This document shows positions 28,400-45,395 of a stretch of DNA of 64,000 bases, one piece after another (positions within the stretch are counted from its first letter, which is position 1; the number at the start of each line of letters is the position of its first letter). Location: the IMG/VR virus record IMGVR_UViG_3300022602_000024, positions 62,001 to 126,000 of that record. One strand, written 5' to 3'. A program made the position numbers and the translations under genes. The notes beneath the pieces were generated by a model. It was not told the origin of the DNA and made no database searches. It saw only the letters and a list, made by a program, of their open reading frames with translations.

Positions 28400-28731
28400 T
28401 TTAGTTCCTTTTCTTTTACATTGCTGAAAACCTGTATACCATGGGCTCTAATCAGTTCAACAGCTTTTAGCCAATCTTGGTTAAACATCTCCACTAGATC
28501 GTCCCTGTTGATGCCAGTGTTGACGTGTAAGGTATAAATTTCATACTGCCTGAGTGTTTTAGTTTTAACTCTCATCATCATACCATCGATCATTTGCCTT
28601 ACAACAGGAGTGGACTGGCCCTGCAACGTGTTCCACATGATTTCTTGTTCTAGTGCACCAAGATCCACACACGCCTCAAGGCCATCCTCGTCCCACGACA
28701 CCAAAAAGCCATTGCTGTTGTCAGTTGTCAT
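28372..28731 (-). CDS. Hypothetical protein
   Basis: 119 aa, coupled to the VWA gene. Confidence 0.6.
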   Translation of the reverse strand: MTTDNSNGFLVSWDEDGLEACVDLGALEQEIMWNTLQGQSTPVVRQMIDGMMMRVKTKTLRQYEIYTLHVNTGINRDDLVEMFNQDWLKAVELIRAHGIQVFSNVKEKELKWNMLTQQN

Positions 28732-29990
28732 TTATCGGCGTTCTCGTAGTGAGCCCACACACCAAACTCGGGTTCGGCATTGGGATTGCCTTTGATAATC
28801 CATACTGTATCAGCATAAGGCTCTACTTCTGCTGGATGCCATTCAAAAAAGCAAAAGTCTGTAAACATGATCAATTTCTTGGGCTCGATGTTGTTTTCTT
28901 TCAACCAGTTCCATACACAATGTGGGTCAGTGCCGCCACCGCCACCGGGTTCAAACGTGCTGATATCTTCCAAGTTATCACTGGTAAACTCGCCACTGTT
29001 ATGAACTTCGGTATCCCACCCCACAACTGTAATCTTGTACTCATCGTAGGCTTCCATGATACCTTTGATCTCGCTCAAGAACACTTTCAAGTCTTTGTCA
29101 GTGATTGAGCCTGAAGTGTCAATACCGATCACAACATCAATTTGCTCACCGGGCTTCATGCCAGGCATGACTGCATCCATGTGCCAACTGCGACGGCTGG
29201 GTTTGGACCATGTAAAGTCACTCTTGACTGTGCTTTGGATTTGTTGTTGCAACAATTCTCTCCAGTTCATAACTGGTTCAGTCAAGTCTTTGATCATGCG
29301 CTTAACACCACCGGGCACATTACCTGCGCCTGCGGCATTGGCTGCAGCCAATACAGCTTCTTTGATCTCATCACGTATGGCCTTTTGCTCATCCTTGCTC
29401 AGGCGTGGGCGACCACCTGCATGTGAACGTTCTTTGCCTTCGCCGTCACCATCTCCCTCGCCATCGTCGCCGGGCTCCAAGTGTTCGTCCAACAACTGCT
29501 TCATCAACTTGTCAATGTCCAACTTGTCGGCATTGGCATACAAGTCATCGTACACTTCTTCTGCGCTCATACCTTTGTATTTGGTATCGTACAGGGCCAC
29601 GGGAATCTTGTCGCCAATTCGTTGCTCAACCAAATCATAGTTGACACAATAGTCATCGGCAATGTTCCACAATTTGGGATCTCTGTTGCCACGACGTCCC
29701 ATGTGATCATAAACCGCATGCAACACTTCGTGCCCAACCAAAAACTCCAATTGTTTCAGGGGCATGTTATTGACAAACTCACTATTGTAGTAAAATCTAC
29801 GTCCATCTGTGGCAGCAGTTGGGCACCAGTCATCACCATTGATCAGTGTCATACGTGTGGCCAAGTTACCAAAAAATGGTGCGCGGAGCAACAATCCAAT
29901 ACGTGCAGTAATCAATTTCTCTCGTGCAGCCTCGTCAATTTTGGGATTGGTAACTGTTTTAACGGTGCTTTTTTCTGCTAATGTTGTCAT
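28728..29990 (-). CDS. Metallopeptidase-like (HExxH) plus VWA-domain protein (DUF2201-like)
   Basis: 'TAATDGR', 'GHEVLH', 'IDTSGSI' (MIDAS), 'GGGGTD', 'FTD'. Confidence 0.85.
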   Translation of the reverse strand: MTTLAEKSTVKTVTNPKIDEAAREKLITARIGLLLRAPFFGNLATRMTLINGDDWCPTAATDGRRFYYNSEFVNNMPLKQLEFLVGHEVLHAVYDHMGRRGNRDPKLWNIADDYCVNYDLVEQRIGDKIPVALYDTKYKGMSAEEVYDDLYANADKLDIDKLMKQLLDEHLEPGDDGEGDGDGEGKERSHAGGRPRLSKDEQKAIRDEIKEAVLAAANAAGAGNVPGGVKRMIKDLTEPVMNWRELLQQQIQSTVKSDFTWSKPSRRSWHMDAVMPGMKPGEQIDVVIGIDTSGSITDKDLKVFLSEIKGIMEAYDEYKITVVGWDTEVHNSGEFTSDNLEDISTFEPGGGGGTDPHCVWNWLKENNIEPKKLIMFTDFCFFEWHPAEVEPYADTVWIIKGNPNAEPEFGVWAHYENADK

Positions 29991-30013
29991 TGTAACTCCT
30001 GTTTAATGTATAT

Positions 30014-30058
30014 ATTATAACACACTTTGAATTATTGGTCTGTGGCTTTTTTGCAACA
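30014..30058 (-). promoter_or_regulatory. Promoter (TATAAT, -35 CAGACC) with the 18-bp box TGTTGCAAAAAAGCCACA
   Basis: -10 at 30014-30019, -35 at 30037-30042, box at 30041-30058. Confidence 0.6.
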
Positions 30059-30062
30059 CTTT

Positions 30063-30338
30063 TTACGCCCATTTTAACTTAAAAAGCGTGAAAGCATCTT
30101 CTTTAAAGTATAGCCTAAGATGCTGAAATTCTGTGTCCCAAGCCCACTGGGCAGTTTGAGATTTCATCCGGATCATGCTGTCTCTTTCGCCACTTGGACC
30201 AAAAGTTTCCCAACACCAAACCCGCCACGCATGGAACGTGGCAATGTTTTGATTCATGGCCGAACTCTCACTGGGGGTCGCATAGTAGGCAAAATAGTGA
30301 TTACCAGTGTGTCGACGATCTAATTTGGTAACTATCAT
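30063..30338 (-). CDS. Hypothetical protein
   Basis: 91-aa ORF. Confidence 0.6.
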   Translation of the reverse strand: MIVTKLDRRHTGNHYFAYYATPSESSAMNQNIATFHAWRVWCWETFGPSGERDSMIRMKSQTAQWAWDTEFQHLRLYFKEDAFTLFKLKWA

Positions 30339-30607
30339 TGCCGCCTCTTGTTAAATGTATCTTCCATGGCCTGAACCGTAGTCATTTGGCACACTTGCTC
30401 GCCTTTGACAATTCTAAAAGTTTTACAGTCTCTATCTTGCGTATAACTCAGTGCATGATCTTCTACACTTTTGCCTGTAGTGCCCAGTATGCCGAGATTA
30501 ACTGAAGTGACAACTGGGCTTGCACACCCAGTTAACAGGCATAACAAAATAGGGGCAATGCCCCTACCTTGCTTACTTGCCGCCTGCAGCAATGATGTAT
30601 TTGCCAT
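30335..30607 (-). CDS. Possible small lipoprotein (start uncertain)
   Basis: Lipobox-like 'LLTGC'; the 5' end runs through a terminator hairpin. Confidence 0.35.
   Translation of the reverse strand: MANTSLLQAASKQGRGIAPILLCLLTGCASPVVTSVNLGILGTTGKSVEDHALSYTQDRDCKTFRIVKGEQVCQMTTVQAMEDTFNKRRQ
30543..30566 (-). terminator. Intrinsic terminator after the MoxR gene
   Basis: TAGGGGC-ATT-GCCCCTA followed by TTTTGTT on the - strand. Confidence 0.55.
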
Positions 30608-31673
30608 AACGCTTGTGGAACTCGTTAAAGCTCTCCAATTTGCCAGGTAACAATGGCAAGTTGTATGTAGTCAACGCAACCCTAGCGCCCATAACAACCA
30701 ACTCTGTTGAGAAATTGTCCATCATAAAGCGGAAGAAACAGTCGGCCATTTTGTGCCAATCGGCAATTTTATCTTTGCTGAGTTTGACATAAGCGTCTTG
30801 CAGTTCATAGCACATACTCACAGTCAACGAATACATAGCACTCACTTCTTTGACTTTGAGCTCTTTGACTTTGCCTTGCAAAATGTCACTGGGGTTAGGC
30901 ATTTGGCTGGCCACTTTGCGGTGTGCCATAAACTTAACTGCCAAGCCGTCACCGATGGTACCTGCAATCAAATCGCTCAACTCAGCATCGGTAGCGTCTT
31001 CGTCATACAAGAACTGACTTACGAAACTCCATGAACGTGGAGTAGCAAAGGCACGTGAACTAGAACGTGGGTTAAAGTCCATCAAGTCATTCTTGGCAAA
31101 GCCAATGTAACCTACCACGTCCTTGTGGATACGATTCTTAACAGCCCACTCATTCCATGAGTCATAGTCTTCTTTGACTTCTAAGTGTACGAAACGATTT
31201 GCCAGGGGCATGGGCATTCTGTAGCTAACACCTTTGTCTGACTCTCTGTTACCTGCCGCAACAATAACCACGTTGTCGGGCAAATTGTAAGTGCCAAGTC
31301 TACGATTAAGCACCAATTGATAAGCCGCGGCCTGTACTGCTGGAGCCGCACTGTTCATCTCATCCAAGAACAAGGTGATCACTGGATGTTGAGCGGCCAA
31401 TTCAGCAGTGGGCAACTCAATGGGCTCGGCCCAGTCCATTTTACCAACTTCTTTGTTGAAGTAAGGAATACCACGCAAGTCAGTGGGATCCAATTGCGAC
31501 AAACGCAAATCAATCATAACACCACCCAAGTCTTTGGTCAAGTCTGCAACCAATTCTGACTTGCCAACTCCAGGAGGACCCCAAAGGAATACGGGACGCT
31601 GAACTTTGAATGCACGTAGAAGTCTGCTACGGGCTTCGTTGGGGCTAACTGTACGATTTTCTGAAATGCTCAT
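30573..31673 (-). CDS. MoxR-family AAA+ ATPase
   Basis: Walker A 'GPPGVGKS', Walker B 'LFLDEMN', 'AAGNR', 'LANRF', 'TPRSW'. Confidence 0.88.
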   Translation of the reverse strand: MSISENRTVSPNEARSRLLRAFKVQRPVFLWGPPGVGKSELVADLTKDLGGVMIDLRLSQLDPTDLRGIPYFNKEVGKMDWAEPIELPTAELAAQHPVITLFLDEMNSAAPAVQAAAYQLVLNRRLGTYNLPDNVVIVAAGNRESDKGVSYRMPMPLANRFVHLEVKEDYDSWNEWAVKNRIHKDVVGYIGFAKNDLMDFNPRSSSRAFATPRSWSFVSQFLYDEDATDAELSDLIAGTIGDGLAVKFMAHRKVASQMPNPSDILQGKVKELKVKEVSAMYSLTVSMCYELQDAYVKLSKDKIADWHKMADCFFRFMMDNFSTELVVMGARVALTTYNLPLLPGKLESFNEFHKRYGKYIIAAGGK

Positions 31674-31716
31674 ATATACTCCTGAAATTAATGAACTTTT
31701 AACTAACTAAAAACAT

Positions 31717-31761
31717 ATTATACGACAAACTTCTTTATTGGTCTGTTGTTTTTATGCAACT
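31717..31761 (-). promoter_or_regulatory. Promoter (TATAAT, -35 CAGACC) with the 18-bp box AGTTGCATAAAAACAACA
   Basis: -10 at 31717-31722, -35 at 31740-31745, box at 31744-31761; same geometry as the 30014 promoter. Confidence 0.6.
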
Positions 31762-32087
31762 CAATGAGTATTAAGTGCGGGCTTGCACTCATTGATTAAT
31801 TCACGTTCGATAGCATGAGCGGGCTTACGTCCACGCACAATATCTACCAATAACACGGAAAATGCTTCTGCACCGTGTTCACGAATGCTGTTGCACAAAG
31901 CCCACGATTTGTTTTCAGTTACAGCACGACGAACGTGCTTCTGAAAACGAACTTTTAGTGCTTTGGTTACTTGTGAGCCGCATACAGTAATACCAATATA
32001 ACTCTCGTTTGTGTTAGTGTTTACTAACATATAAACGGCGTGTTTGGTATCTTGTCTGCGTTTACGGGTTTGTTTTTTGCTGTCCAT
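31761..32087 (-). CDS. GIY-YIG-family nuclease-like protein
   Basis: 'AVYMLVNTNTNESYIGIT', 'RFQKH', 'ERELI', 'LN'. Start moved to MDSKK. Confidence 0.7.
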   Translation of the reverse strand: MDSKKQTRKRRQDTKHAVYMLVNTNTNESYIGITVCGSQVTKALKVRFQKHVRRAVTENKSWALCNSIREHGAEAFSVLLVDIVRGRKPAHAIERELINECKPALNTH

Positions 32088-32093
32088 GTAGTT

Positions 32094-32148
32094 ATTATAG
32101 CAAAAGTGCCATTTATGGACAACCAAACGGTGTTGTTTTTAGCACAAA
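32094..32148 (-). promoter_or_regulatory. sigma70-type promoter TTGTCC-17-TATAAT (leaderless) with upstream box
   Basis: -10 at 32094-32099, -35 at 32117-32122, box at 32131-32148; ATG 6 nt after the -10. Confidence 0.6.
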
Positions 32149-32165
32149 AAAGTAGTACTAAAGTG

Positions 32166-33308
32166 TTACTTTTTGAACACAAAAATACCCTCAAATTTTG
32201 TGCTATTTTCACTACGATTATTGCCTACTCCCGGGCGAGTTGTCAACAACATTTTAAGAGTTTCTGTGTGTTTAAAACCACACTTTTCGCTCAGCTCAAT
32301 CCAGCGTTCTACTATTTTAAACTGCTCTTTGCCGTGTTTATAGTCGGCAATGTTGACTGCATATACCCCATCATCAGCAAGTGCACGATGAATCATCTTT
32401 AACGTGGGTGCCACGTAACCTTCGAACCAACGATCAATGTCGCTATAACGATTCATACACTGGGTTGGTTCATCAGTGTAGGTTTCAAGATTAAAGTATG
32501 GGGGGCTAGAAAAGGCTGCATCGTAAGTGCCAGGTTCAGGCTCAAACTCCTCACTAGGCATACAATTCATACTAAATCCAGATCCTTGGCCTTCGTCTTG
32601 TAACAGTTCGCCTAGGGCCTGTAATCCTTCAAACGTTCGAGTGTTGGGATCAATACCGGTATAATGATAACGCATACGACTGGTCATTGAACCTAGCATA
32701 CGTCCGCCATAGCCTGAACTAAAGTCCAATAGGTTGCCCATAAATGTGGGGCAAAGATATTCCCATACTGCACGAGCATTTAACGGTTTGAAGTTTTGTA
32801 TAGTGCCACCATTGACCAATTCTATAGCAGTTCTGATCAAGTGCGGGAATACTGCTTCATCACCATTGTCTCGATGTTGATAGCACAATTTGATAGCACG
32901 TTTGAATTTGACATCATGATTAAATCTTGATCGTAAGCTCACAGTATCATTTGTATTCCATTTAGCATCTTGCATGTTAGGAAACCAAAAACGTGCAAAC
33001 GCATTACCATCATTGCCACCAATGGCTAGAGTTTTCTTTGTGACAGATTTGTTCTTGTGTGCTAGATTACGAATCTGTGCTCTACATCCTTCTAAACTGT
33101 AGTAGGTTAAAGGTAGCACATTTACTGCACGATAGATATCGAACACTTCTTGTTCAATGGCCAATCGACCTGCTTCATCTGCGGCTGCCCAACGTTCCTT
33201 ATTCAATCGGCGTAGGTCCTTCTCTACACTTTCGTATCCGGTGTAGATGTCAGCAGTGGGAACAACTCCCCATTCTGCACAAACTTGATCGTAATACGCT
33301 TGAATCAT
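32166..33308 (-). CDS. Amino (N4-C/N6-A) DNA methyltransferase
   Basis: 'LLDFSSGYGGR' (motif I), 'GIDPN', 'FSSPPYFNLETY' (motif IV). Confidence 0.82.
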   Translation of the reverse strand: MIQAYYDQVCAEWGVVPTADIYTGYESVEKDLRRLNKERWAAADEAGRLAIEQEVFDIYRAVNVLPLTYYSLEGCRAQIRNLAHKNKSVTKKTLAIGGNDGNAFARFWFPNMQDAKWNTNDTVSLRSRFNHDVKFKRAIKLCYQHRDNGDEAVFPHLIRTAIELVNGGTIQNFKPLNARAVWEYLCPTFMGNLLDFSSGYGGRMLGSMTSRMRYHYTGIDPNTRTFEGLQALGELLQDEGQGSGFSMNCMPSEEFEPEPGTYDAAFSSPPYFNLETYTDEPTQCMNRYSDIDRWFEGYVAPTLKMIHRALADDGVYAVNIADYKHGKEQFKIVERWIELSEKCGFKHTETLKMLLTTRPGVGNNRSENSTKFEGIFVFKK

Positions 33309-34234
33309 TCTTCAGTGACAAATAACGATTCGTTTTTGATTGCTTTGCTATATAACAATACTTCTTTTGCAGCTTTGGCTTCTTTTATTGTGACATTTGC
33401 TTTACCTTCTTCTTGTACTGTTTTTGTAGATCTACGCCCAGCAGTATAAGTGATATCATAATAACTGATATCTAAATTTCCTTGATTGTCTGTGTAAAAT
33501 GTATCACCAGCATTGCGGTTGCAGTACATAACAATATGTCCTTCTTGATCTGCTTTTTTGCAAAAATCAATTAGTTCTAAATGTTTATTATCGTCAAAGT
33601 CTGTTCCGTATTGCGTAAAACTATCACGATAAGGAGGATCAAAAAAGAATAGTGCTCGACCTTCTATATTAGTACCGAGACAATGTTTCCATTCACCACT
33701 GTGGATAGAAACTTTTTGTAAGAACTTGTGCCACTCTAACACATTTTCTTTGTCATATACGCTGTCTTTTTGATTAAGCAACCCAGATGGAGTACAAAAT
33801 CTTCCTTTGGCTTCTTTGGTGCTTTGCCATATACCATTAAATGCGGTCTTCATTAAAAAGTACAATGTGGCACTTTCTTTAGCGGCTGACCAAGATTGAT
33901 ATTCTGTGGTGTATTCTTTTCTTATTTTATAATAAAAAACTTTTCTTTCGGCCTTGGACATAGGCAAATACTGATTGCAAAGATGATCACATTCAGTAGT
34001 GAACTCTGTAATGTGATCTCGTATGGCAAGATATAACCCCACGATTTCCGGGTTTATATCATTGAGTATAAACTTAATGTTGGGATTATTTTTATAGATA
34101 TGAATCATCATAGCACCACCTCCGAAGAATGGTTCTACATAAGTATCGTATCCATTTTTTGGTATGCCGGGATTAAGTTCGTACTTGGGTATCATTTTAT
34201 TCTTACCACCGGCCCACATGTATAAAGGTTTCAT
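33305..34234 (-). CDS. Dam/D12-class N6-adenine DNA methyltransferase
   Basis: 'WAGGK', 'YVEPFFGGGA', 'LNDIN', 'FFDPPY'. Confidence 0.9.
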   Translation of the reverse strand: MKPLYMWAGGKNKMIPKYELNPGIPKNGYDTYVEPFFGGGAMMIHIYKNNPNIKFILNDINPEIVGLYLAIRDHITEFTTECDHLCNQYLPMSKAERKVFYYKIRKEYTTEYQSWSAAKESATLYFLMKTAFNGIWQSTKEAKGRFCTPSGLLNQKDSVYDKENVLEWHKFLQKVSIHSGEWKHCLGTNIEGRALFFFDPPYRDSFTQYGTDFDDNKHLELIDFCKKADQEGHIVMYCNRNAGDTFYTDNQGNLDISYYDITYTAGRRSTKTVQEEGKANVTIKEAKAAKEVLLYSKAIKNESLFVTEE

Positions 34235-34245
34235 AGTATATTATA

Positions 34246-35073
34246 TTAGTTTAAAAAACATTCCACAAGTGTTGTGGCTATCTCTGAATTTGCTTTGCCT
34301 TCTTGCATCATGTCCAACACAATTTCATGTGCTTCTGTTAGATATGCACGGGGCAATCTGTGCCAAACTGGGAATAATGGATCACCGGGAGTCTGTGCAA
34401 AGGTACTAAAACGCATTTCTAATTCTCGACGTGCAAGTTCTTTAGCGATTCTTTCCGTGCGTTCTTCGTCAGTCTCAAAGTTTCTGATAAAGAAATCTAC
34501 ACTACTTGATTTGCTTGCGTTTCCGTTGGTTATTGTCAAATATTGTTTGGCCTTTTCAAAAGGTATATCTAACCCTAATATACCAATCATTATGTTAAAG
34601 ATTTCTTCTTCAGTGAATCCATTGGGTTGATAGTAAAAGATGCAGTTGTCGCCGTTGATGGCTCTCATCGTTTGTCCAAACTCATACAATACTCCGCCAG
34701 GATTTGCTCCTTCCCCAGTCATGAATGTGATGTATTTTACATCAGGATTCATTCGGTAACAAATCAAATAGTTTTTGGTCCATCGTTCAATAGCATTACC
34801 GCCATCCTGTTGGTGCTTGGCTTCAAATACAAATTTAATAGATCTTGGTTGATTACGTGAACCATCAAACCACATGCCGCCATCGGGAACACATCCTAAG
34901 GTGACATTCATATTATGACATTCTGGGAGTATCTTATTCTTTTGGTGTCCGATTTCAAAACAATATTTTTCTTGACATATAGCAATAGCCATAGCGATGT
35001 TCTTAACATCGCCGTCGAGCTGTTTAGACTCGGTACTGCCTGCTTCTGTACCTACTTGGATACCACCAGCCAT
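34246..35073 (-). CDS. EcoRI/MunI-family type II restriction endonuclease-like protein
   Basis: 'PDGG...FVFEAKHQ..GGNAIERWTKN' matches EcoRI's PDGG...EAKHQ...GNAIERSHKN. Confidence 0.75.
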   Translation of the reverse strand: MAGGIQVGTEAGSTESKQLDGDVKNIAMAIAICQEKYCFEIGHQKNKILPECHNMNVTLGCVPDGGMWFDGSRNQPRSIKFVFEAKHQQDGGNAIERWTKNYLICYRMNPDVKYITFMTGEGANPGGVLYEFGQTMRAINGDNCIFYYQPNGFTEEEIFNIMIGILGLDIPFEKAKQYLTITNGNASKSSSVDFFIRNFETDEERTERIAKELARRELEMRFSTFAQTPGDPLFPVWHRLPRAYLTEAHEIVLDMMQEGKANSEIATTLVECFLN

Positions 35074-35122
35074 AATAAATCCTCTTTAAAATAATTAATC
35101 TTTTTACTCTCTGACAGTTGTT

Positions 35123-35192
35123 ATTATATAGTCGGCATCTATTAGTGTCAACTCCAAAATAACAAAACATTGAGTGTTGTTTTTATACAAAA
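35123..35192 (-). promoter_or_regulatory. Consensus sigma70 promoter TTGACA-17-TATAAT with upstream box
   Basis: -10 at 35123-35128, -35 at 35146-35151, box at 35175-35192. Confidence 0.75.
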
Positions 35193-35199
35193 GTAGTAC

Positions 35200-35580
35200 T
35201 TAAGTATTACTTTCTTCCAGTGTATCTAAATATTTCTGCAAATCCCCATAAAGTGTAAGGGTAACTGCTTCAGATTCTTCAAAGATGATAAACTTTTCAC
35301 GTTTGAGCAAGTAATACATTGATGGAAATACACGTTCCAGTTTGAGTATGTAGGCGTTGCTGATTTCTGTTTCTAGGCGAAACTCGTAGGGCTTGAGTTC
35401 TAGTTCCTTGATGGCCATACGCAGGCCATCCAAGGAGAGTCTAAGGCTATTGGCATCGGTGGGATTAATCCACCATAAGTTACGATGATACGAAGTTTCT
35501 GCAGATGGTATGCCGATCTGTTGGCAGAATATCTCAGTGAGTTGGCGTTGCGAGAAACGCTTATGGGAAGATTTTTTCAC
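35200..35580 (-). CDS. Hypothetical protein
   Basis: 126-aa ORF. Confidence 0.65.
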   Translation of the reverse strand: MKKSSHKRFSQRQLTEIFCQQIGIPSAETSYHRNLWWINPTDANSLRLSLDGLRMAIKELELKPYEFRLETEISNAYILKLERVFPSMYYLLKREKFIIFEESEAVTLTLYGDLQKYLDTLEESNT

Positions 35581-35848
35581 CTTGCTTTAGTAAGACAACA
35601 CTAAACGATTCTGTTTTGTACAGGCTGTTTAGTTTCTTACAAAGATTAATTGCGTGTCCTTTATTGCTGAAAGACACTTTAGAATACTTGGGACCAGGGT
35701 ATGCCACCAGCACATTGCTGGTTTTGAGATTGATGGGTCGATTTTCGTAAAAGACCGCATAGATACCATCGGCTTGTAAAACCTGAGAACTCTTGTATGT
35801 TGTTTTATTGACGTGGTCTAATAACACCGTCGGTTTTGGTCTTGACAT
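35561..35848 (-). CDS. Hypothetical basic protein
   Basis: 95 aa; ATAAATA motif upstream at 35870-35876. Confidence 0.7.
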   Translation of the reverse strand: MSRPKPTVLLDHVNKTTYKSSQVLQADGIYAVFYENRPINLKTSNVLVAYPGPKYSKVSFSNKGHAINLCKKLNSLYKTESFSVVLLKQGEKIFP

Positions 35849-35894
35849 CTCATGTATCCTTGATACTCTTATTTATCACCTTAATATAGGTAGT

Positions 35895-36104
35895 TTATTT
35901 AAAACCACCACCGTCCATGGTAACAGCAACGGCATTGGTAGTGGTGCGATTTAAACTGACATTTGTGGCCATCAAATCGTAAATTTCCGCATGCAAATTG
36001 CGTGCTTCTTCGGCATTTAGTGTAAGAATCTTGCCGCTAGTTTGATTCATAGCTCTTACTCTATCATTAAACATTTTTATATGTAATGGTAAATTATTGT
36101 CCAT
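35895..36104 (-). CDS. Hypothetical protein
   Basis: 69 aa, coupled to the upstream gene. Confidence 0.6.
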   Translation of the reverse strand: MDNNLPLHIKMFNDRVRAMNQTSGKILTLNAEEARNLHAEIYDLMATNVSLNRTTTNAVAVTMDGGGFK

Positions 36105-36573
36105 TTGCTTCTTTCATTGCGTCCATCATGCGCTCTTGTGTTTTAAAAGGACCTTGATATTCGTAGCGGTTTAAGGTAATGAGTTTTGGACAGTAAGCAC
36201 GAACCCATGTGTTACTGAATTTAACAATGTAATATCCTGCACAAAAGAAACTTTTACTCTTGGCTCCTTTGGTATAGATAGGCAAGTAGCGTTGCACGTC
36301 CAAGACCTGATTGTGTGGGGCACTATTGGTAGGGAATCCATACACATCATAATGGTCTGACTTTTCACGCACAGGCTTTTCGGCTTTGGCAAATGCAATA
36401 TTGTATTTCTTGCTCAACAATTTGATACTGGGAAACACTTCACGCTGATCATCGTGCACATAAGCAACACCACCATCTTCATCAATGGCTTGGATAGTGG
36501 CAATTTTGTTGCCATTGCTTTCCACAATCCAAAATTTATTTTTAACTACAGGTTTAGCGATTATTTCGGTCAT
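36094..36573 (-). CDS. Hypothetical protein
   Basis: 159 aa, ATGA overlap. Confidence 0.7.
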   Translation of the reverse strand: MTEIIAKPVVKNKFWIVESNGNKIATIQAIDEDGGVAYVHDDQREVFPSIKLLSKKYNIAFAKAEKPVREKSDHYDVYGFPTNSAPHNQVLDVQRYLPIYTKGAKSKSFFCAGYYIVKFSNTWVRAYCPKLITLNRYEYQGPFKTQERMMDAMKEANGQ

Positions 36574-36851
36574 AGTGAGATTCTCAACAATTCCATACTA
36601 ACAATATGCCCAATACGTTCAGCAACATCTTCTTCCGACGTGATAATGTGTGTAATGTGATTGTTGCGATCTGTTTTGCGATCGTAGTGCCTAATCTGTA
36701 CAATGGTACCGCCATGTGCTGGCATGACATTGAAGCACAGGCCTTCTACTTCTATCATGTCTCTAGCCCGTACTGGACTAATGGCAAGTATATCACCGTC
36801 GCTGTCGTCGCGGTTTAACCAATTTCTCAATTTTCTTTTTAACCAACTCAT
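36570..36851 (-). CDS. Hypothetical protein
   Basis: 93 aa, ATGA overlap. Confidence 0.65.
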   Translation of the reverse strand: MSWLKRKLRNWLNRDDSDGDILAISPVRARDMIEVEGLCFNVMPAHGGTIVQIRHYDRKTDRNNHITHIITSEEDVAERIGHIVSMELLRISL

Positions 36852-39449: not shown

Positions 39450-39722
39450 TTATCGTTTTAGTAACCACATCATGTGCTCTTGAGCATTGTGCCATCTATA
39501 TTCCCATACAGGCGATCCAGGTCCGGTCCATACGGCAGCACCAACAAATCCTTTTTTGAGCCAAATACGTTTTTGGCTTAAATCGCATCGTTGTGGTGTT
39601 AATGCAAAACGTTCTTCCCACTCGGCTCTACGATAAAATGCACCATCTGCATCATCTATCCATCGGTTGTTTGACATGGCCCGCTTTCCTAGATATCCTG
39701 TGCCCATCATCAGGTGCCCCAC
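39450..39722 (-). CDS. Hypothetical protein
   Basis: 90-aa ORF. Confidence 0.5.
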   Translation of the reverse strand: MGHLMMGTGYLGKRAMSNNRWIDDADGAFYRRAEWEERFALTPQRCDLSQKRIWLKKGFVGAAVWTGPGSPVWEYRWHNAQEHMMWLLKR

Positions 39723-40555
39723 TCGTTCTTGAACAATGGCACTTGTAGTCGATCACTGTAACGCCAGCCACGTTTCATTGCGGCTAGTGCTACATTCCTT
39801 GCATTTAACGTGTAAACATTCTCTACACCGCCCACAGGCATGATATAAACATGCCCTTTAAACCCTGCTGATCTAAATTCTCTTACTGCACGTTCTGCAT
39901 CTAACAAATCTTCTTCAGTGGCTACAACAAGTTTAAGATATACTGTACCAACTTGTTCATATTCGCATACAATCTCGGGTCGGATAGCATCCGCCCACTT
40001 CTCGCCACTAGCAGGAAGTTTAGCACTTACGCTGAATGTGATTTCTCCATTTTTCCATCTAGCCCATTCTTGCAAATATCGTTTAAATTCTAGAGTTAAC
40101 TTTTGCGTGCCATTTGTTTCAAATGTGATTTCTTTCAAGTCTGACATTTTAGGATGATCCAGCAAGTCTGGATAAGCACGTTGCCATCCTAGCAATGGCT
40201 CGCCTCCTGTGATGACAAGGTGCTCATCGATCCAGGTCTTGTATGGGAGAATGTGCATGATTCTATCTGCAATGGCGTCTGTTGTGAGCATTGGACTAAG
40301 TTCTTTAAAATCAGGATGCCAACTAGCATAGCTGTCACAACCCGTAGATACAAGAGGAAGTTCTTCATATTTGTTAAAGTGGTAAACGACTTGTGCAATA
40401 TCATCAGCTTCGGTACTGAGTTCACCACGTGGCATACCAAAGCCGGCACATTTAAAGTTACAACCAAATGTGCGTAAGAATACCGACGGCACACCCATAT
40501 AGCGACCTTCTCCTTGTACGCTATAAAACAATTCTGCGATTTTGAGTTTACTCAT
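39710..40555 (-). CDS. queE: 7-carboxy-7-deazaguanine synthase (radical SAM)
   Basis: 'ELFYSVQGEG', 'VFLRTFGCNFKC...CDS', 'ITGGEPL', 'FETNGT', 'SAKL', 'SDRLQV'. Confidence 0.88.
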   Translation of the reverse strand: MSKLKIAELFYSVQGEGRYMGVPSVFLRTFGCNFKCAGFGMPRGELSTEADDIAQVVYHFNKYEELPLVSTGCDSYASWHPDFKELSPMLTTDAIADRIMHILPYKTWIDEHLVITGGEPLLGWQRAYPDLLDHPKMSDLKEITFETNGTQKLTLEFKRYLQEWARWKNGEITFSVSAKLPASGEKWADAIRPEIVCEYEQVGTVYLKLVVATEEDLLDAERAVREFRSAGFKGHVYIMPVGGVENVYTLNARNVALAAMKRGWRYSDRLQVPLFKNEWGT

Positions 40556-40820
40556 AGATTGATGACCATTTCTTAAGTTTTTCAATTTTGTGTTGCTTTG
40601 CAATGTCTAATTGTACAGTATCTAGTACACCTTGGTCAACTAAAATGTCGATTAATGCCAACATATCTCCAACTTCCATTACCAAAGTTTCTCTGTGCGG
40701 TAAATTAGTATGATGCGAAAGTTCATCTAATCCAAATCTTCTGATTTTACTAACTTCTACTATTACTTCTGCACATTCTTCTTGTAGTATACCCAAGGCT
40801 TCTTCTATTTTTGAATTCAT
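40548..40820 (-). CDS. MazG-like NTP pyrophosphohydrolase
   Basis: 'LQEECAEV...EVGDMLA' all-alpha NTP-PPase motif. Confidence 0.7.
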   Translation of the reverse strand: MNSKIEEALGILQEECAEVIVEVSKIRRFGLDELSHHTNLPHRETLVMEVGDMLALIDILVDQGVLDTVQLDIAKQHKIEKLKKWSSIYE

Positions 40821-42085
40821 GATATATTATGTCTGTTGAATTGTTCTATTAACCAAGGAAATAGTGTGGGCCAGCTGGTTCCGCGCCTGCGGTCTAATTC
40901 GTTTAAGTAGGCATACATTTCTTTTAGTTTTGAAATATTTGGTTTACTAACTGCTACTTGTTGTCTAATGCCCTTCATATACGGAGTAAAATTAGCATAC
41001 CAAGAATCCAATGATGCAGTTTCTTCCATTACTGCAATAATCTTTGCAAAATCATCATCGAACACATCTCCTCCTAAGTAATCGGGATTCAACGGCTGTG
41101 GATCTTGTACAGTCATAAAGTTCTGGTATATGGGACGCTGGCGCCTCCAACCATTCATCTTACTCATTAAGTCTGGCATGGTTTTGATACTCAATGTGTT
41201 AATAGCACTATTGATATTTAGAACGATCCAATCCTGGCTGACCAAATATTCAAAGTTTTTCTCCCATCGATCCAAGTTCAACGGAAAACGCACATATTCC
41301 TGTTCCGGACCCCAGCAATCAATACTGCCAGTGATCTGTAGAGTTTTCATTTTGCCATCTTGTACAATCTTTTTAAATCGTTCAATTTTGTTTATTAAAC
41401 GATCAGTACTACAGTTAAGATTAGTAACAATGTTAAAGAACAATTCAGGATTACTGTGTTGCTCCACAAAATCCAAACATTCGTCAAACTCCTGTTGAAA
41501 GAAAGGTTCTCCTCCTAAGAATTGAAAGTGTGTAACTTGATTGTAGTGTTGATCCCACCAGGCCCAAAACTTTTCCACATACGCACGCCGGTTGGCGTCA
41601 ACTTGATAGTTACTATTTAATTCAAATGTTGCATATTTCCAATCACCAAACTTTTTGTTTTCGGCTTGCCATGCGCTGGAGTAATGCGGCCCGCAGTAGA
41701 TACATTTTAAATCACATGTGTTATCAAAGTATACTTCTACCATCTTCGGTACTACACTGGTTGCAGTAGGATCAGTATATACTTCGTTGGGGGTTACATG
41801 TTGCAATTTTTCATTGTTGAAATGTCTATCACTGTAACCACCAGCATCTTCAATTTTGCGACAGTATTCGCAACCATTGCCAGGCCAAGAGCCGTCTAAC
41901 ATCAGTTGACGATCGCGTTGCTTTTCTGGCAAGTTATGAAAATCGTCAAAAGAGTCTAAGTCAAACTTATACTGACGTGTCCGATGGCAACTTGCGCTGG
42001 CGCTGTTGGCCATGTATATTGTGCTCCAAGTCCACTTTAGTTGGCACGTTGGATCTATGTTGATTGGCCATGTTTTTTGAGTCAT
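40817..42085 (-). CDS. Radical SAM protein, paralogue of 4949 and 6321
   Basis: CDLKCIYC, 'LGGEPF'; N-terminal CQLKW...SCHR...CEYC. Confidence 0.82.
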   Translation of the reverse strand: MTQKTWPINIDPTCQLKWTWSTIYMANSASASCHRTRQYKFDLDSFDDFHNLPEKQRDRQLMLDGSWPGNGCEYCRKIEDAGGYSDRHFNNEKLQHVTPNEVYTDPTATSVVPKMVEVYFDNTCDLKCIYCGPHYSSAWQAENKKFGDWKYATFELNSNYQVDANRRAYVEKFWAWWDQHYNQVTHFQFLGGEPFFQQEFDECLDFVEQHSNPELFFNIVTNLNCSTDRLINKIERFKKIVQDGKMKTLQITGSIDCWGPEQEYVRFPLNLDRWEKNFEYLVSQDWIVLNINSAINTLSIKTMPDLMSKMNGWRRQRPIYQNFMTVQDPQPLNPDYLGGDVFDDDFAKIIAVMEETASLDSWYANFTPYMKGIRQQVAVSKPNISKLKEMYAYLNELDRRRGTSWPTLFPWLIEQFNRHNIS

Positions 42086-42120
42086 GTGTGTTTTCTCTGT
42101 ATTCTTTTTTGGCTCTACGC

Positions 42121-43326
42121 TCAATGTGATTCATTAGTTTTTTGGTCGACATTTTTAATTATCTCGGTTACAGTTTTAGCAGTATATGGACCTAGTGTCC
42201 ATCCTAAGTGCCCGTGTCCTGTATTATAAAACACTTTTGCATTTTTGTCACTCTGTTTGATGATAGGCATCATGTTTGGCGTCATTGGGCGAAGGCAAGC
42301 ATATTGTGTGTAATCGTGTGTATTGATATTTGGAAAGTTTGTTTTGATCCACTTTAACAAAGGCTCAATTCTAGCACGAGTGATATCATAATTTTCCCCT
42401 GCTAGTTCAGCAGTCCCAGCTACACGAAACTTATTACCTAAACTTGAAGTAACAATTTTGGCTTCGTCGTCTAACAAACTTACTTTAGGCAAGTATTTGG
42501 CGTCAACATTGTTAATAGTAACACTATATCCTTTGATAGGGTATACTCCGATGTTGTCGCCGATTTGTTCAGCAAGCTCTGTGCTGCCCACTCCATTTGC
42601 ACCCACCACTGCATCATAATCTTCAGTTAATGTTTCTAGATCTTCGATCTTCCATTCATAAAAGAATTCAACCGCATATTTGTTTTTAAGGATATCTGCA
42701 AGTTGGTAACAAAACTTGTGTATATCTCCAGTCCAGTCACTGGGAGTAAATGTTGCGCCAACAACTCCATCAACATCAACCAACGCAGGATCTATAGTGC
42801 TGACAGCAGAAGGAGCAACCTCAACTCTATCTAATCCATTTGCATTGTATAACTTGGTAACTGCTTGTGCATTTTGCCAATAACTGTCTTTTTTATAGAA
42901 ATGCAAAATACCACAGTTGCTGCGATCAAACTCGATGGTTTCTTCTGCACAGATCTCATCGTACAATCTGCGACTCTCCAAAGCCATTTTTACAGTTGCG
43001 GCAGTATTTTTGGGACCTTCATTTCGAATAGTTGCCCACAAGAACCGAACTACCCAACGCCACATGGCCCAATCTAAACGCCAAGGGCGGAATAGAAATG
43101 GAGCATCTTTGGTAAACATCCACTTGATGCCTTTGTATACATTGCTCCATGATGTCCATGTTTCACTATTGCTGACAGATATTTGTCCACCATTGGCAAA
43201 ACTGGTTTTCATACCAGCATAGCGTTCTGCTTCGTATACCGTAACTTCATATCCTTCTCTTGCAAGATAATACGCAGTTGTGACTCCAGTGATACCTGCC
43301 CCGATTACTGCTACTGTTTTAGTCAT
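42121..43326 (-). CDS. dadA: FAD-dependent D-amino acid dehydrogenase
   Basis: 'GAGITGVTTAYYL', 'TSFANGGQIS', 'YPIKGYS', 'LRPMTPN', 'NTGHGHLGWT'. Confidence 0.85.
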   Translation of the reverse strand: MTKTVAVIGAGITGVTTAYYLAREGYEVTVYEAERYAGMKTSFANGGQISVSNSETWTSWSNVYKGIKWMFTKDAPFLFRPWRLDWAMWRWVVRFLWATIRNEGPKNTAATVKMALESRRLYDEICAEETIEFDRSNCGILHFYKKDSYWQNAQAVTKLYNANGLDRVEVAPSAVSTIDPALVDVDGVVGATFTPSDWTGDIHKFCYQLADILKNKYAVEFFYEWKIEDLETLTEDYDAVVGANGVGSTELAEQIGDNIGVYPIKGYSVTINNVDAKYLPKVSLLDDEAKIVTSSLGNKFRVAGTAELAGENYDITRARIEPLLKWIKTNFPNINTHDYTQYACLRPMTPNMMPIIKQSDKNAKVFYNTGHGHLGWTLGPYTAKTVTEIIKNVDQKTNESH

Positions 43327-44321: not shown

Positions 44322-44801
44322 TTAAATAAACTCGCCGTCTTCGCGGTGACCCTGGCGATAGGCCATATTTGACGGAGTTTCTCTAACTTCAACTTTTGAA
44401 CACCAAACTCGGTCTGCTTCAGACTTACCGCAATTTGGCAAGAAGATAGTATTCACATACTCATATAGAAAATCGGCAATGCCTTCGCATCCGGTTTTTT
44501 CTACTTCTGTAATTTTTGCCAAACCTAATGCACCTAACTGTTTGATGGTATCATAGTACGGATCGTCTTGAGCCAATAGTAGAACATGGTCAAAGTATTC
44601 TTCTAAAAAGTCCTTGAGTGGGCGTAAACCACCGTAATCAAAACACCAATTGCGGGCGTCAAGGTCATCACACTCAAATTCAAATTTGAATGATAGTGCG
44701 TAACCATGGATAAGATTACAATGACTGTCAGCCCTCCATTGACGATATGCCACTGGGGCTAAATGTGAATATTCTTTTGTTGATATAAATTTTTTAGACA
44801 T
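44322..44801 (-). CDS. queD: 6-carboxy-5,6,7,8-tetrahydropterin synthase
   Basis: 'HCNLIHGY', 'DYGGL', 'FDHVLL', 'CEGIA', 'VEVRETPSN'. Confidence 0.85.
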   Translation of the reverse strand: MSKKFISTKEYSHLAPVAYRQWRADSHCNLIHGYALSFKFEFECDDLDARNWCFDYGGLRPLKDFLEEYFDHVLLLAQDDPYYDTIKQLGALGLAKITEVEKTGCEGIADFLYEYVNTIFLPNCGKSEADRVWCSKVEVRETPSNMAYRQGHREDGEFI

Positions 44802-45076: not shown

Positions 45077-45395
45077 ACGTTTCGTATTCTTTCATATTGT
45101 GTGCTACAACATTTTCATTGAATTTGAGTATAAACATATAAGCTGCATTGGCATCGTTGCCGTTAAAGTTTATTTTAACATGTCCGGTACCGTCTTGTCT
45201 ATGATAACTAGATTTGGCTTGCCCGTATTGCACGTCTTTTATAATTTTTGGATTAAGAGACCTACCGTAGTATGTCTCTTTTGTTATTACAGTACCACCA
45301 ATCATCTCAAACCATTCACACATTTCGTCTGTTAACTGATCTATGTCAATCCAAATACTGTAGTGTAGTTTTGCACCCGGAGGTAAAGATATCAT
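45066..45395 (-). CDS. Hypothetical protein
   Basis: 109 aa, ATGA overlap. Confidence 0.6.
   Translation of the reverse strand: MISLPPGAKLHYSIWIDIDQLTDEMCEWFEMIGGTVITKETYYGRSLNPKIIKDVQYGQAKSSYHRQDGTGHVKINFNGNDANAAYMFILKFNENVVAHNMKEYETYVY

What the first reader, a model, noticed from the sequence alone, without database searches (positions are those of the whole stretch)
32166..35192. Phage-encoded R-M-like cassette: EcoRI-family nuclease plus two methyltransferases under a consensus promoter
Seen: TTGACA-17-TATAAT followed by the nuclease (PDGG...EAKHQ..GNAIER..KN), a Dam-like DPPY MTase and an SPPY MTase. The cassette is flanked on both sides by a similar GTGTTGTTTTTA..(A)CAAAA..GTAGTACT sequence (about 32130-32159 and 35174-35200). 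GAATTC (e.g. 4399, 12056) and CAATTG (e.g. 3332) are present in the window, so those sites are not avoided. Inference: the phage cuts host or competitor DNA and protects itself by methylation or deazaguanine. The flanking repeats suggest the cassette moves by promoter-to-promoter recombination. A Dam-class partner is not EcoRI's usual cognate MTase, so the specificity may be new.
Basis: partly seen in the sequence, partly recalled or inferred. Interest (0 to 1): 0.65.

Follow-up and report, generated by a model that had tools for sequence, protein, structure and literature searches.

The report
Mobile phage EcoRI-like restriction-methylase pair
A 354-kb freshwater jumbo phage carries a movable two-gene unit, a stripped-down relative of the EcoRI cutting enzyme followed by a Dam-type DNA methylase, which most likely lets the phage cut unmethylated host or rival DNA at AATT-type sites while its own methylated genome is spared.

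Summary
The 275-aa protein is a real but compact EcoRI relative. Its predicted structure matches EcoRI best (Z 10.9). A profile comparison with true EcoRI proteins gives 95% probability. The catalytic residues and the residues that read AATT in EcoRI are identical, and EcoRI's inner arm is missing. The model also predicts an EcoRI-like symmetric dimer.

The partner is a Dam-family methylase. The pairing is conserved: 62 of 80 viral loci with a nuclease relative have this methylase downstream on the same strand, and one locus has the two fused. In all 52 linked methylases, the arginine that reads the G of GATC in E. coli Dam is replaced by glutamine. I therefore predict an AATT-type target. This is untested.

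Three corrections:
- The mobile unit is two genes, not three. The 380-aa "SPPY" gene is a backbone gene that relatives keep in the same place without the pair, and its substrate is unknown.
- The flanking repeats belong to promoter-region motif families found across the genome. They are not cassette ends.
- Methylation, not deazaguanine, is the likely self-protection.

The pair sits at a different genome position in a related phage. Apart from one 2.9-kb MAG contig (itself nuclease plus D12, possibly a binned phage), the family was found only in phages.

The parts
35123..35151 (-). Sigma-70 consensus promoter TTGACA-17-TATAAT driving the nuclease, the MTase and the 380-aa gene
   Evidence: 12 of 12 match. 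One of 13 perfect sites in the genome, all on the minus strand, against 0.08 expected per spacer. No intergenic gap or convincing terminator before 32166.
34246..35073 (-). Compact EcoRI-superfamily nuclease, 275 aa. Residues 1-168 form the PD-(D/E)xK core; residues 170-275 form a helical domain of unknown role that is absent from the roughly 175-aa short forms.
   Evidence: AF2 pLDDT 86.9. Foldseek top hit EcoRI, E 3.6e-4. VIA Z 10.9, 144 aa, rmsd 3.4, 21% identity to 1qc9. hhalign against true PF02963 proteins: probability 94.9%, E 4.7e-8. D64, E84, K86, Q88, N93, A94, E96 and R97 are invariant or nearly so in 35 homologues.
33305..34234 (-). Dam-family (D12, alpha-class) N6-adenine DNA methyltransferase, 309 aa, with a 'Q-type' recognition hairpin
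   Evidence: PF02086 E 2e-29. TIGR00571 149 bits. DpnM E 3e-16. The EcoDam R124 equivalent is Q137, invariant in 52 of 52 nuclease-linked MTases. It is the only D12 gene in the genome.
32166..33308 (-). Backbone gene co-transcribed with the pair: a 380-aa class I SAM methyltransferase with an SPPY motif and an N-terminal helical domain. Substrate unknown. Not part of the mobile unit.
   Evidence: Start overlaps the MTase stop (ATGA). 70-71% identical orthologues sit in the same synteny in L009 and L010 without the nuclease or D12 gene. More than 1566 homologues. Best folds are Trm11/TrmN m2G tRNA MTases, Z about 15, tied with many class I MTases.
35174..35213 (-). Upstream regulatory module: imperfect 24-bp palindrome (35190-35213, overlapping the stop of the 126-aa gene) plus a TAAAAACAACAC box (35174-35185)
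   Evidence: The RNA hairpin is weak (-5.8 kcal/mol, z -0.6). A variant metagenome contig departs from this genome exactly at 35189 (table 7).
32094..32172 (-). Second copy of the same module (palindrome 32149-32172, box 32130-32141) with promoter TTGTCC-17-TATAAT (32122..32094). It heads the next variable slot.
   Evidence: The slot downstream of the 380-aa gene differs between G000, L009 and L010.
31761..32126 (-). GIY-YIG homing-endonuclease-like ORF (121 aa) filling the second variable slot. A neighbour, not part of the R-M pair.
   Evidence: PF01541 E 2e-5. PHROG homing endonucleases.

Best explanation
This is a phage-borne Type IIP-like restriction-modification pair.

Shown:
- An EcoRI-superfamily nuclease gene is followed by a Dam-family m6A methylase gene.
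- Both sit behind a perfect host-type (sigma-70) promoter, with the backbone 380-aa gene read through behind them.
- The pair is accessory and occupies different genome slots in related phages.
- The same nuclease-then-methylase order recurs across many aquatic phages.

Inferred:
- The nuclease works as a symmetric homodimer and reads a palindromic site with an AATT core. It keeps EcoRI's Gln115, Asn141, Ala142, Glu144 and Arg145 equivalents and lacks the arms. No equivalent of Arg200, which helps EcoRI read the outer G, could be aligned.
- The methylase methylates the inner A of the same site. It keeps Dam's residues for the central A-T pairs and has Gln where Dam's Arg124 reads guanine.
- Packaged phage DNA arrives already methylated, so the nuclease can safely be made first and early by host RNA polymerase.
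- Unmethylated host DNA, or the DNA of a co-infecting phage without the methylase, is cut about every 150-250 bp. This would shut the host down, feed nucleotide pools and exclude rivals.
- The pair moves between variable slots by recombination at the short conserved promoter-region modules that head those slots.
For: Nuclease fold and homology. Residue mapping comes together with the EcoRI contacts described in PMC4081073.

Predicted symmetric dimer: ipSAE 0.61 against a best control of 0.00. The runs agree in at least 93% of contacts, and partner pLDDT is 76. The pass mark was reached by 20 of 30 proteins solved as pairs and by 1 of 23 solved as single chains. My own alignment was used, so those counts hold only roughly. 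Because EcoRI dimers are solved, the pass may reflect likeness rather than independent evidence. The interface is the helix that starts at GNAIER.

Linkage:
- 62 of 80 IMG/VR loci have a D12 MTase downstream on the same strand. In 46 it abuts the nuclease; in 16 it lies 0.7-1.4 kb away.
- One locus has an in-frame nuclease-MTase fusion (L068).
- The one complete genome without an adjacent MTase has the same Q-type MTase about 18 kb away.
- Mantel r 0.82 between nuclease and MTase distances, 0 of 2000 permutations as high.

MTase recognition residues: EcoDam R124 becomes Q in 52 of 52; K9 becomes M or I; Y138 becomes L. Y119 (as F), N120, L122 (as I or V) and P134 are kept. Their roles are described in PMC4417163. 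M.Tsp509I methylates the inner A of AATT (PMC3287169).

Mobility: in L001 the pair sits among genes that map to 202-214 kb of G000, not 95-97 kb. L009 and L010 fill the slot with unrelated genes.

Promoter class.
Against: - No activity, cut site or methylation mark has been measured. The AATT prediction rests on residue analogy alone.
- The family does not reach Pfam EcoRI, and an HMM of the family does not find EcoRI in the PDB.
- 18 of 80 loci show no D12 MTase in the flank held, 4 of them with under 1.7 kb of downstream sequence. L007 also has none within 5 kb.
- AATT is only mildly depleted in the phage (0.81), like several other palindromes, so composition is uninformative.
- The Mantel correlation could reflect shared phage ancestry alone.
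- Nuclease and MTase identities are incongruent between L001 (78% and 67%) and L003 (56% and 79%). The two genes are therefore not always inherited as one block.
- The palindromes are poor RNA hairpins.
- No excision joint was seen. Only contigs were available, and the one long joint had just 21 letters on its shorter side.
Confidence: 0.6

Rival explanations
1. The pair is mainly a selfish mobile element. In mixed infections it cuts genomes that lack it, and recombinational repair or simple exclusion spreads it, much as homing endonucleases do. Any benefit to the phage against the host would be secondary.
For: It occupies different slots in related phages. It sits among other selfish nucleases: GIY-YIG here and HNH in the same slot of L010. 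In lake metagenome X3, backbone genes are covered by many more contigs of relatives than the pair is (depth from contigs is only indicative). The family was found almost only in phages: 1 hit, on a 2.9-kb MAG contig, among 185,579 species genomes.
Against: This does not exclude the main reading, because the molecular mechanism is the same. The pair is old and widespread, with nuclease identities down to about 31% across cyanophage-like and jumbo phage contigs. That suggests retention by selection rather than a transient parasite.
Confidence: 0.2
2. The nuclease serves the phage's own DNA metabolism. It could be a Dam-directed strand-discriminating nickase like MutH, or a recombination or repair nuclease, rather than a restriction enzyme.
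For: It is always tied to a Dam-family MTase, as MutH is functionally. In cyanophages it lies next to denV and endonuclease VII.
Against: The best structural and profile matches are EcoRI, BstEII, Bse634I and MunI; MutH is not in the lists. EcoRI's base-reading residues are invariant. A symmetric dimer is predicted. The pair is accessory and mobile, not a core gene.
Confidence: 0.08
3. The phage protects itself through 7-deazaguanine in its DNA, and the Dam-type MTase has another role.
For: FolE (47093-47842), QueD-like (44322-44801) and QueE-like (39710-40603) genes lie in the window.
Against: No TGT/DpdA or QueC match in the genome. The unknown 403-aa neighbour matches no transglycosylase in the PDB by sequence. 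The nuclease-MTase linkage holds in 62 of 80 loci; I did not check those loci for deazaguanine genes. An AATT core contains no G.
Confidence: 0.05
4. The protein is a degenerate or non-cutting DNA binder, and the gene pair is an annotation coincidence.
For: No Pfam or NCBIfam hit. PHROG 2400 is of unknown function.
Against: The catalytic P-D...E-x-K residues are invariant or nearly so in 35 diverse homologues. Gene order is conserved in 62 loci, and one locus has a fusion.
Confidence: 0.05

Closest known systems
EcoRI / RsrI / MunI / MluCI group of Type IIP restriction endonucleases (Pfam PF02963; PDB 1ERI, 1QC9, 1D02)
   Same: PD-(D/E)xK alpha-branch fold. Identical PDGG, EAKHQ and GNAIER..KN strings, mapping to P90-D91, E111-K113-Q115, G140-R145 and N149. 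The predicted symmetric dimer is built on the recognition helix.
   Different: The core is only about 165 aa. EcoRI's inner arm is missing (a 21-residue gap covering EcoRI positions 118-138), and nothing aligns beyond EcoRI position 173, which includes R200. The family falls below Pfam detection. It carries an extra C-terminal helical domain, or none in the short forms. Its partner is a Dam-family MTase instead of PF13651. Apart from one 2.9-kb MAG contig, it was found only in phages.
Dam family methyltransferases (EcoDam 2G1P, DpnM 2DPM, T4 Dam; PF02086, TIGR00571)
   Same: Full-length match above the curated cut-offs. FxGxG and DPPY motifs. The hairpin residues that read or intercalate at the central A-T pairs are kept (Y119 as F, N120, L122 as I or V, P134).
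   Different: The residues that read G:C are replaced in every nuclease-linked member: R124 by Q, K9 by M or I, Y138 by L (roles from PMC4417163). GATC specificity is therefore doubtful.
Tsp509I / MluCI AATT restriction-modification systems
   Same: The predicted target and the predicted methylated base match: M.Tsp509I makes A-m6A-TT (PMC3287169).
   Different: The match is a prediction only.
PeSL promoter-terminator cassettes of T4-type phages (PMC2839356, PMC4122927)
   Same: Short conserved intergenic modules hold a sigma-70 consensus early promoter with an AT-rich upstream part. They sit at the heads of variable slots between core genes, and the slots hold unrelated genes in related phages.
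   Different: The stem-loop here is an AT-rich imperfect palindrome that overlaps gene ends and folds weakly, not a GGGG...CCCC terminator. The conserved upstream box TAAAAACAACAC is specific to this phage lineage. No mini-circles or recombination joints were seen.
Virus-encoded R-M used to degrade host DNA (chlorella viruses), and T4 EndoII/EndoIV acting on unmodified host DNA
   Same: The logic is the same: the virus marks its own DNA and an early nuclease attacks unmarked DNA.
   Different: Different enzymes and marks. The comparison comes from general knowledge and was not tested here.

Membership tests
EcoRI endonuclease family (PF02963) | Match to the Pfam model above its cut-off | tested here: not met
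   No Pfam hit for the protein at E 0.01 or better. No PF02963 match anywhere in the genome at E 10 or better. An HMM of 35 homologues does not find EcoRI in the PDB.
EcoRI endonuclease family (PF02963) | Profile-level homology to bona fide members | tested here: met
   hhalign of A1 against three PF02963 proteins (E 1e-121 to 1e-150): probability 94.9%, E 4.7e-8, 113 columns, 30% identity.
EcoRI endonuclease family (PF02963) | PD...(D/E)xK catalytic residues (EcoRI D91, E111, K113) | tested here: met
   D64, E84 and K86 align to them. In 35 homologues E84 is invariant and D64 and K86 are at least 90% conserved.
EcoRI endonuclease family (PF02963) | EcoRI-like three-dimensional core | tested here: met
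   Predicted model only. Foldseek top five hits are all EcoRI. VIA Z 10.5-10.9 against 8.9 for the next family. An Atlas cluster that is 100% PF02963 matches at TM 0.60.
EcoRI endonuclease family (PF02963) | Residues that read the inner AATT (Q115, N141, A142, E144, R145) | tested here: met
   Q88, N93, A94, E96 and R97 align to them and are invariant. Contacts are described in PMC4081073.
EcoRI endonuclease family (PF02963) | Inner and outer arms, and the element that reads the outer G:C pair (R200 region) | tested here: not met
   A 21-residue gap covers EcoRI positions 118-138, and there is no alignment beyond position 173. The model spans 151 residues against 230 in EcoRI.
EcoRI endonuclease family (PF02963) | Cognate EcoRI-type methylase (PF13651) next door | tested here: not met
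   The partner here is PF02086. The three true EcoRI loci all have PF13651.
EcoRI endonuclease family (PF02963) | Homodimer | tested here: inconclusive
   The prediction supports a symmetric dimer: ipSAE 0.61 against a best control of 0.00, at least 93% contact agreement between runs, pLDDT 76. The pass mark was reached by 20 of 30 proteins solved as pairs and 1 of 23 solved as single chains. It may reflect memory of solved EcoRI dimers.
EcoRI endonuclease family (PF02963) | Site-specific Mg2+-dependent cleavage | not testable with these tools
   Needs the enzyme.
Dam family N6-adenine MTase (PF02086 / TIGR00571) | HMM match above the curated cut-offs, with FxGxG and DPPY motifs in alpha-class order | tested here: met
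   103 bits against 22, and 149 bits against 115. EPFFGGGA precedes FDPPY in the sequence.
Dam family N6-adenine MTase (PF02086 / TIGR00571) | GATC-reading residues of EcoDam (R124 for Gua4; K9 and Y138 for base pair 1) | tested here: not met
   Q137, M6 and L153 occupy these positions in the pairwise HMMER alignment. Q is invariant in 52 linked MTases.
Type II restriction-modification system | Nuclease and MTase genes adjacent and inherited together | tested here: met
   62 of 80 loci, always in the same order and on the same strand. One fusion. Mantel r 0.82.
Type II restriction-modification system | Both enzymes act on the same sequence, and methylation blocks cleavage | not testable with these tools
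   Only the residue-based prediction of an AATT core for both.
N6/N4 DNA methylase (PF01555), for the 380-aa gene | Match above the cut-off and a DNA-MTase-like fold | tested here: not met
   17.3 bits against a cut-off of 26.7. The best folds are tRNA m2G MTases Trm11/TrmN, Z about 15, not separated from other class I MTases. Distant Vibrio phage homologues are annotated as N4-C methylases.
PeSL-type regulatory cassette | Sigma-70 consensus early promoter in a repeated intergenic motif at the borders of variable slots | tested here: met
PeSL-type regulatory cassette | Stable stem-loop acting as a terminator | tested here: inconclusive
   -10.2 and -5.8 kcal/mol, z -1.25 and -0.58. The terminator scan finds none at these sites.
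PeSL-type regulatory cassette | Recombination between flanking copies (mini-circles, deletion joints) | tested here: inconclusive
   Only assembled contigs were available. One variant contig breaks at 35189. One 4.8-kb joint has just 21 letters on its shorter side.

The most novel reading that the evidence does not exclude
This would be a family of miniature restriction-modification systems confined to phages: an armless EcoRI core plus a Dam methylase whose guanine-reading arginine has become glutamine. That change would naturally re-aim Dam from GATC to AATT. The systems would be widespread in aquatic jumbo and T4-like phages, including Synechococcus phages. They would serve as early host-genome shredders and inter-phage weapons, moving between genomes by recombination at promoter modules.
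Probability: 0.35. Interest if true: 0.7.

Novelty: new variant of a known kind. Interest (0 to 1): 0.55.

Why it matters
1. It assigns a testable function and a predicted target to PHROG 2400, a family listed as of unknown function. Relatives occur in at least 65 Synechococcus phage records and dozens of uncultured freshwater and marine phage contigs.

2. It offers a candidate for how some aquatic phages break down host DNA or exclude rivals.

3. If the Arg-to-Gln swap really moves a Dam enzyme from GATC to AATT, it is a clean natural example of specificity re-coding. It also means that "Dam" annotations in phage genomes cannot be read as GATC methylation, which matters for methylome-based host linking.

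4. A 165-aa EcoRI core without arms would be a useful minimal scaffold for studying how this enzyme family couples recognition to cutting.

Tried and rejected
- Megablast of the 4.2-kb region against 50,697 phage records found nothing.
- Sequence searches of the nuclease against the PDB, alone and as a 35-sequence profile, did not reach EcoRI. Pfam and NCBIfam gave no family. The link needed a fold search and a profile-profile comparison with EcoRI genes fetched from Bacteroidota genomes.
- The C-terminal domain (168-275) gave no usable Atlas hit.
- The idea that the three genes form one cassette bounded by the two repeats is rejected on synteny.
- Reading the palindromes as strong terminators is not supported.
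- Deazaguanine protection: pathway genes are partly present, but no transglycosylase or QueC was found.
- Composition gave no clue to the target.
- The reads step gave contigs only. It showed presence in many lake metagenomes but no clean excision joint.
- The large representative-protein search was not run. The family profile did not reach EcoRI even at E 10 in the PDB, so a single non-iterated pass would have added little, and no claim here rests on absence from that library.


Full report
SETTING

The window is bases 62001-126000 of a single 354,429-bp virus record (IMG/VR, CheckV 98% complete, 40.5% G+C). Its DNA polymerase is nearest to those of the jumbo myoviruses Sinorhizobium phage Phosso (52%) and Agrobacterium phage Atu_ph07 (47.5%). 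Identical sequence occurs in contigs of at least 10 freshwater or lake metagenome runs from many studies. This is an uncultured freshwater jumbo phage.

OBSERVATION

All genes in the region lie on the minus strand:
- a 275-aa ORF (35073..34246)
- a 309-aa ORF (34234..33305)
- a 380-aa ORF (33308..32166) whose ATG overlaps the preceding stop (ATGA)
- a 121-aa GIY-YIG ORF (32126..31761)

TTGACA-17-TATAAT lies at 35151..35123. The genome holds 13 perfect TTGACA-N16-18-TATAAT sites, all on the minus strand, against 0.08 expected per spacer and strand. The promoter is therefore real and belongs to a class of host-type early promoters.

GAATTC (69 sites) and CAATTG (184 sites) are not avoided.

THE NUCLEASE

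Pfam, NCBIfam and direct PDB sequence searches give nothing. PHROGs places it in phrog_2400, of unknown function.

An AlphaFold model built from 35 homologues (pLDDT 86.9) has EcoRI as its five best Foldseek hits (E 3.6e-4). With VIA-align it matches EcoRI at Z 10.5-10.9 (144 residues, rmsd 3.4, about 21% identity). The next hits are BstEII at 8.9, Bse634I at 7.9 and MunI at 7.4. An ESM Atlas cluster that is 100% PF02963 also matches.

To get a sequence-level test, I fetched three true EcoRI genes from Bacteroidota genomes (PF02963, E 1e-121 to 1e-150). Each is paired with a PF13651 EcoRI methylase. hhalign of the phage family against them gives 94.9% probability and E 4.7e-8. The mapping is:
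- P63-D64 to P90-D91
- E84-A-K86-H-Q88 to E111-A-K113-H-Q115
- G92-N-A-I-E-R97 to G140-R145
- N101 to N149

A 21-residue gap covers EcoRI positions 118-138, which is the inner arm. Nothing aligns after EcoRI position 173.

According to the review PMC4081073, Ala142 wedges into the centre of AATT, and Asn141, Ala142 and Arg145 bond to the inner A-T pairs. EcoRI, MunI and MluCI (AATT) are cited there as a possible mosaic group.

In the 35-sequence alignment these residues are invariant. A homodimer prediction passes: ipSAE 0.61 against a best control of 0.00, at least 93% contact agreement, pLDDT 76. The pass mark was reached by 20 of 30 proteins solved as pairs and 1 of 23 solved as single chains. 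The symmetric interface lies on the helix that begins at GNAIER. This may partly reflect the model's memory of EcoRI dimers.

Residues 170-275 form a helical domain of unknown role. Many relatives, including those in Synechococcus phages S-RIM2, S-BM1 and S-CREM2, are short forms of about 175 aa that lack it. In GenBank, S-CREM2 gp11 is already labelled "restriction endonuclease EcoRI". The S-CREM2 paper's main text does not contain that label and discusses only the Dam gene.

THE PARTNER

The 309-aa protein is a Dam-family (D12) methylase. DpnM is the closest solved structure. It is the only D12 gene in the genome.

Among 80 IMG/VR loci that encode a nuclease relative, 62 have a D12 methylase downstream on the same strand. 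In 46 the two genes abut or overlap. In 16 the methylase lies 0.7-1.4 kb away, as in S-CREM2, where denV sits between them.

One locus (L068) has the two in a single open frame of 473 aa. Of the 18 loci without a D12 gene, four have under 1.7 kb of downstream sequence. Others carry DUF6267, a helicase or a 2OG oxygenase nearby. The only complete genome among them has the same type of methylase about 18 kb away.

Nuclease and methylase distances correlate (Mantel r 0.82), although shared phage ancestry could explain this. Among one genome each from 185,579 prokaryote species, the family's motifs confirm one relative, on a 2.9-kb contig of an Aquirufa MAG, again with a D12 gene. As far as this search reaches, the family is a phage family.

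PREDICTED TARGET (INFERENCE)

PMC4417163 sets out the roles of the EcoDam residues:
- R124 reads the guanine of the fourth base pair, and R124A loses that discrimination.
- K9 and Y138 read the first pair.
- L122 and P134 read the third.
- Y119 intercalates between the central A-T pairs.

In the HMMER alignment, the phage enzyme has F, N, I and P at the Y119, N120, L122 and P134 positions. It has Q137 for R124, M6 for K9 and L153 for Y138. In all 52 nuclease-linked methylases the R124 position is Q. S-CREM2 gp8 and the unlinked G001 enzyme also have Q there.

Glutamine is the classical adenine reader, so the change fits a move from G-A-T-C to A-A-T-T with the same inner adenine as target. M.Tsp509I is known to make A-m6A-TT (PMC3287169).

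Two independent lines therefore point to an AATT core: the nuclease keeps EcoRI's AATT readers, and the methylase loses Dam's G readers. What reads the flanking base, if anything, is open. The phage has 2,479 AATT sites (observed/expected 0.81), so a four-base cutter would shred unmethylated DNA.

WHAT MOVES

In the related jumbo-phage contig L001 (nuclease 78% identical), the pair lies among genes whose orthologues sit at 202-214 kb of this genome, not at 95-97 kb. The gene after the methylase there is an unrelated P-loop plus GNAT protein.

In relatives L009 and L010 the backbone order is the same as here: FEN nuclease, small genes, 126/132-aa gene, [slot], 380/382-aa gene, [slot], MoxR-like AAA, DUF2201. 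The first slot holds three or so unrelated genes instead of the pair.

So the mobile unit is nuclease plus methylase. The 380-aa gene is backbone. It has more than 1566 homologues at about 70% identity. It is a class I SAM methyltransferase with an SPPY amino-methyltransferase motif, and its nearest folds are tRNA m2G enzymes. Whether it acts on DNA is unknown.

THE REPEATS

Each copy consists of two parts. The first is a 24-bp imperfect palindrome, AAAGTAATACTTWAGTAYTACTTT, that overlaps the end of the upstream gene. The second is a TAAAAACAACAC box a few bases further on, followed by the -35 and -10 hexamers.

The palindrome occurs at least 4-6 times in the genome. The box occurs upstream of about a dozen intergenic promoters, always on the minus strand. 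Both are far above simulated expectation. Several copies lie at 206.2-206.8 kb, inside the slot where L001 carries its pair.

The RNA hairpins are weak. The copies in the window head the two variable slots, and they do not bracket one cassette. This resembles the PeSL promoter-terminator modules that mediate gene shuffling in T4-type phages (PMC2839356, PMC4122927). One metagenome contig diverges from this genome exactly at 35189, at the palindrome/box junction. No clean deletion joint or circle could be shown from contigs.

SELF-PROTECTION BY DEAZAGUANINE

The window does hold FolE, QueD-like and QueE-like genes. No TGT/DpdA or QueC match was found. The conserved methylase partner is the simpler explanation.

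VERDICT

The finding is a phage-specific, mobile, two-gene R-M-like pair of a new variant type: a compact EcoRI-like core with a Q-type Dam partner. Its predicted AATT-core specificity is untested.

Gene order (nuclease first), the host-type consensus promoter and the pre-methylated incoming genome fit early attack on unmethylated host or rival DNA. That step is inferred, not shown.

Noticed in passing
window 31761-32126 (-): A free-standing GIY-YIG homing-endonuclease-like ORF (121 aa) fills a second variable slot between the 380-aa gene and the MoxR-like AAA gene. L009 and L010 have unrelated small genes there, and L010 has an HNH ORF in the first slot.
   Followed up: partly
window 39710-40603, 44322-44801, 47093-47842 (-): QueE-like radical SAM, QueD-like PTPS and GTP cyclohydrolase I genes form part of a 7-deazaguanine pathway. 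No QueC or TGT/DpdA match was found in the genome. An unknown 403-aa ORF (45392-46603) and a radical-SAM-like 435-aa ORF (40817-42124) lie among them.
   Followed up: partly
whole genome G000: AGCT (observed/expected 0.58), AAGCTT (2 sites against 24 expected), AGCGCT (0 against 11.5) and CGCG (0.55) are strongly avoided. This suggests host restriction systems of the AluI, HindIII or Eco47III type.
   Followed up: no
whole genome G000, e.g. genome 107443, 153568, 194497, 195912, 204150: All 13 perfect TTGACA-N16-18-TATAAT promoters and all exact TAAAAACAACAC boxes lie on the minus strand. Many cluster in small-gene regions at 192-207 kb and around 289 kb.
   Followed up: partly
L068:1878-3296: A single open frame of 473 aa joins a short-form nuclease directly to the D12 methylase (...NEILEGKF-MKPIFTWAGGK...). 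This is a natural fusion or a lost stop codon.
   Followed up: partly
L001:9775-10824 and L006:6816-7883: In two other phages the gene after the methylase is a P-loop NTPase plus GNAT acetyltransferase of about 350 aa. It is 81% identical between them, whereas L001's nuclease is 78% and L006's only about 43% identical to the window's. No homologue is found in G000.
   Followed up: no
L001 and L003 against window 33305-35073: Identities are incongruent. L001: nuclease 78%, methylase 67%. L003: nuclease 56%, methylase 79%. This suggests recombination inside the pair.
   Followed up: no
L071, L073, L077, L080, L081, L084: In loci where the short-form nuclease has no D12 neighbour, a DUF6267 protein of about 300 aa lies next to it, on either side.
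   Followed up: no
window 34263-34277 (-): A terminator-like hairpin (CCACAACACTTGTGG followed by a T run) lies inside the last codons of the nuclease gene, just before the methylase. Hits of this kind are no more frequent in the region than chance predicts.
   Followed up: no
window 28728-31673 (-): A MoxR-like AAA ATPase (366 aa) and a DUF2201/VWA-like protein (420 aa) form a backbone pair conserved at 81-84% identity in L009 and L010.
   Followed up: no
window 30800-36600 in run X3: In one lake metagenome, summed contig depth is 60-300 over the backbone genes but about 5 over the nuclease-methylase pair. Abundant relatives apparently lack the pair at 85% or more nucleotide identity. Depth from contigs is only indicative.
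   Followed up: partly
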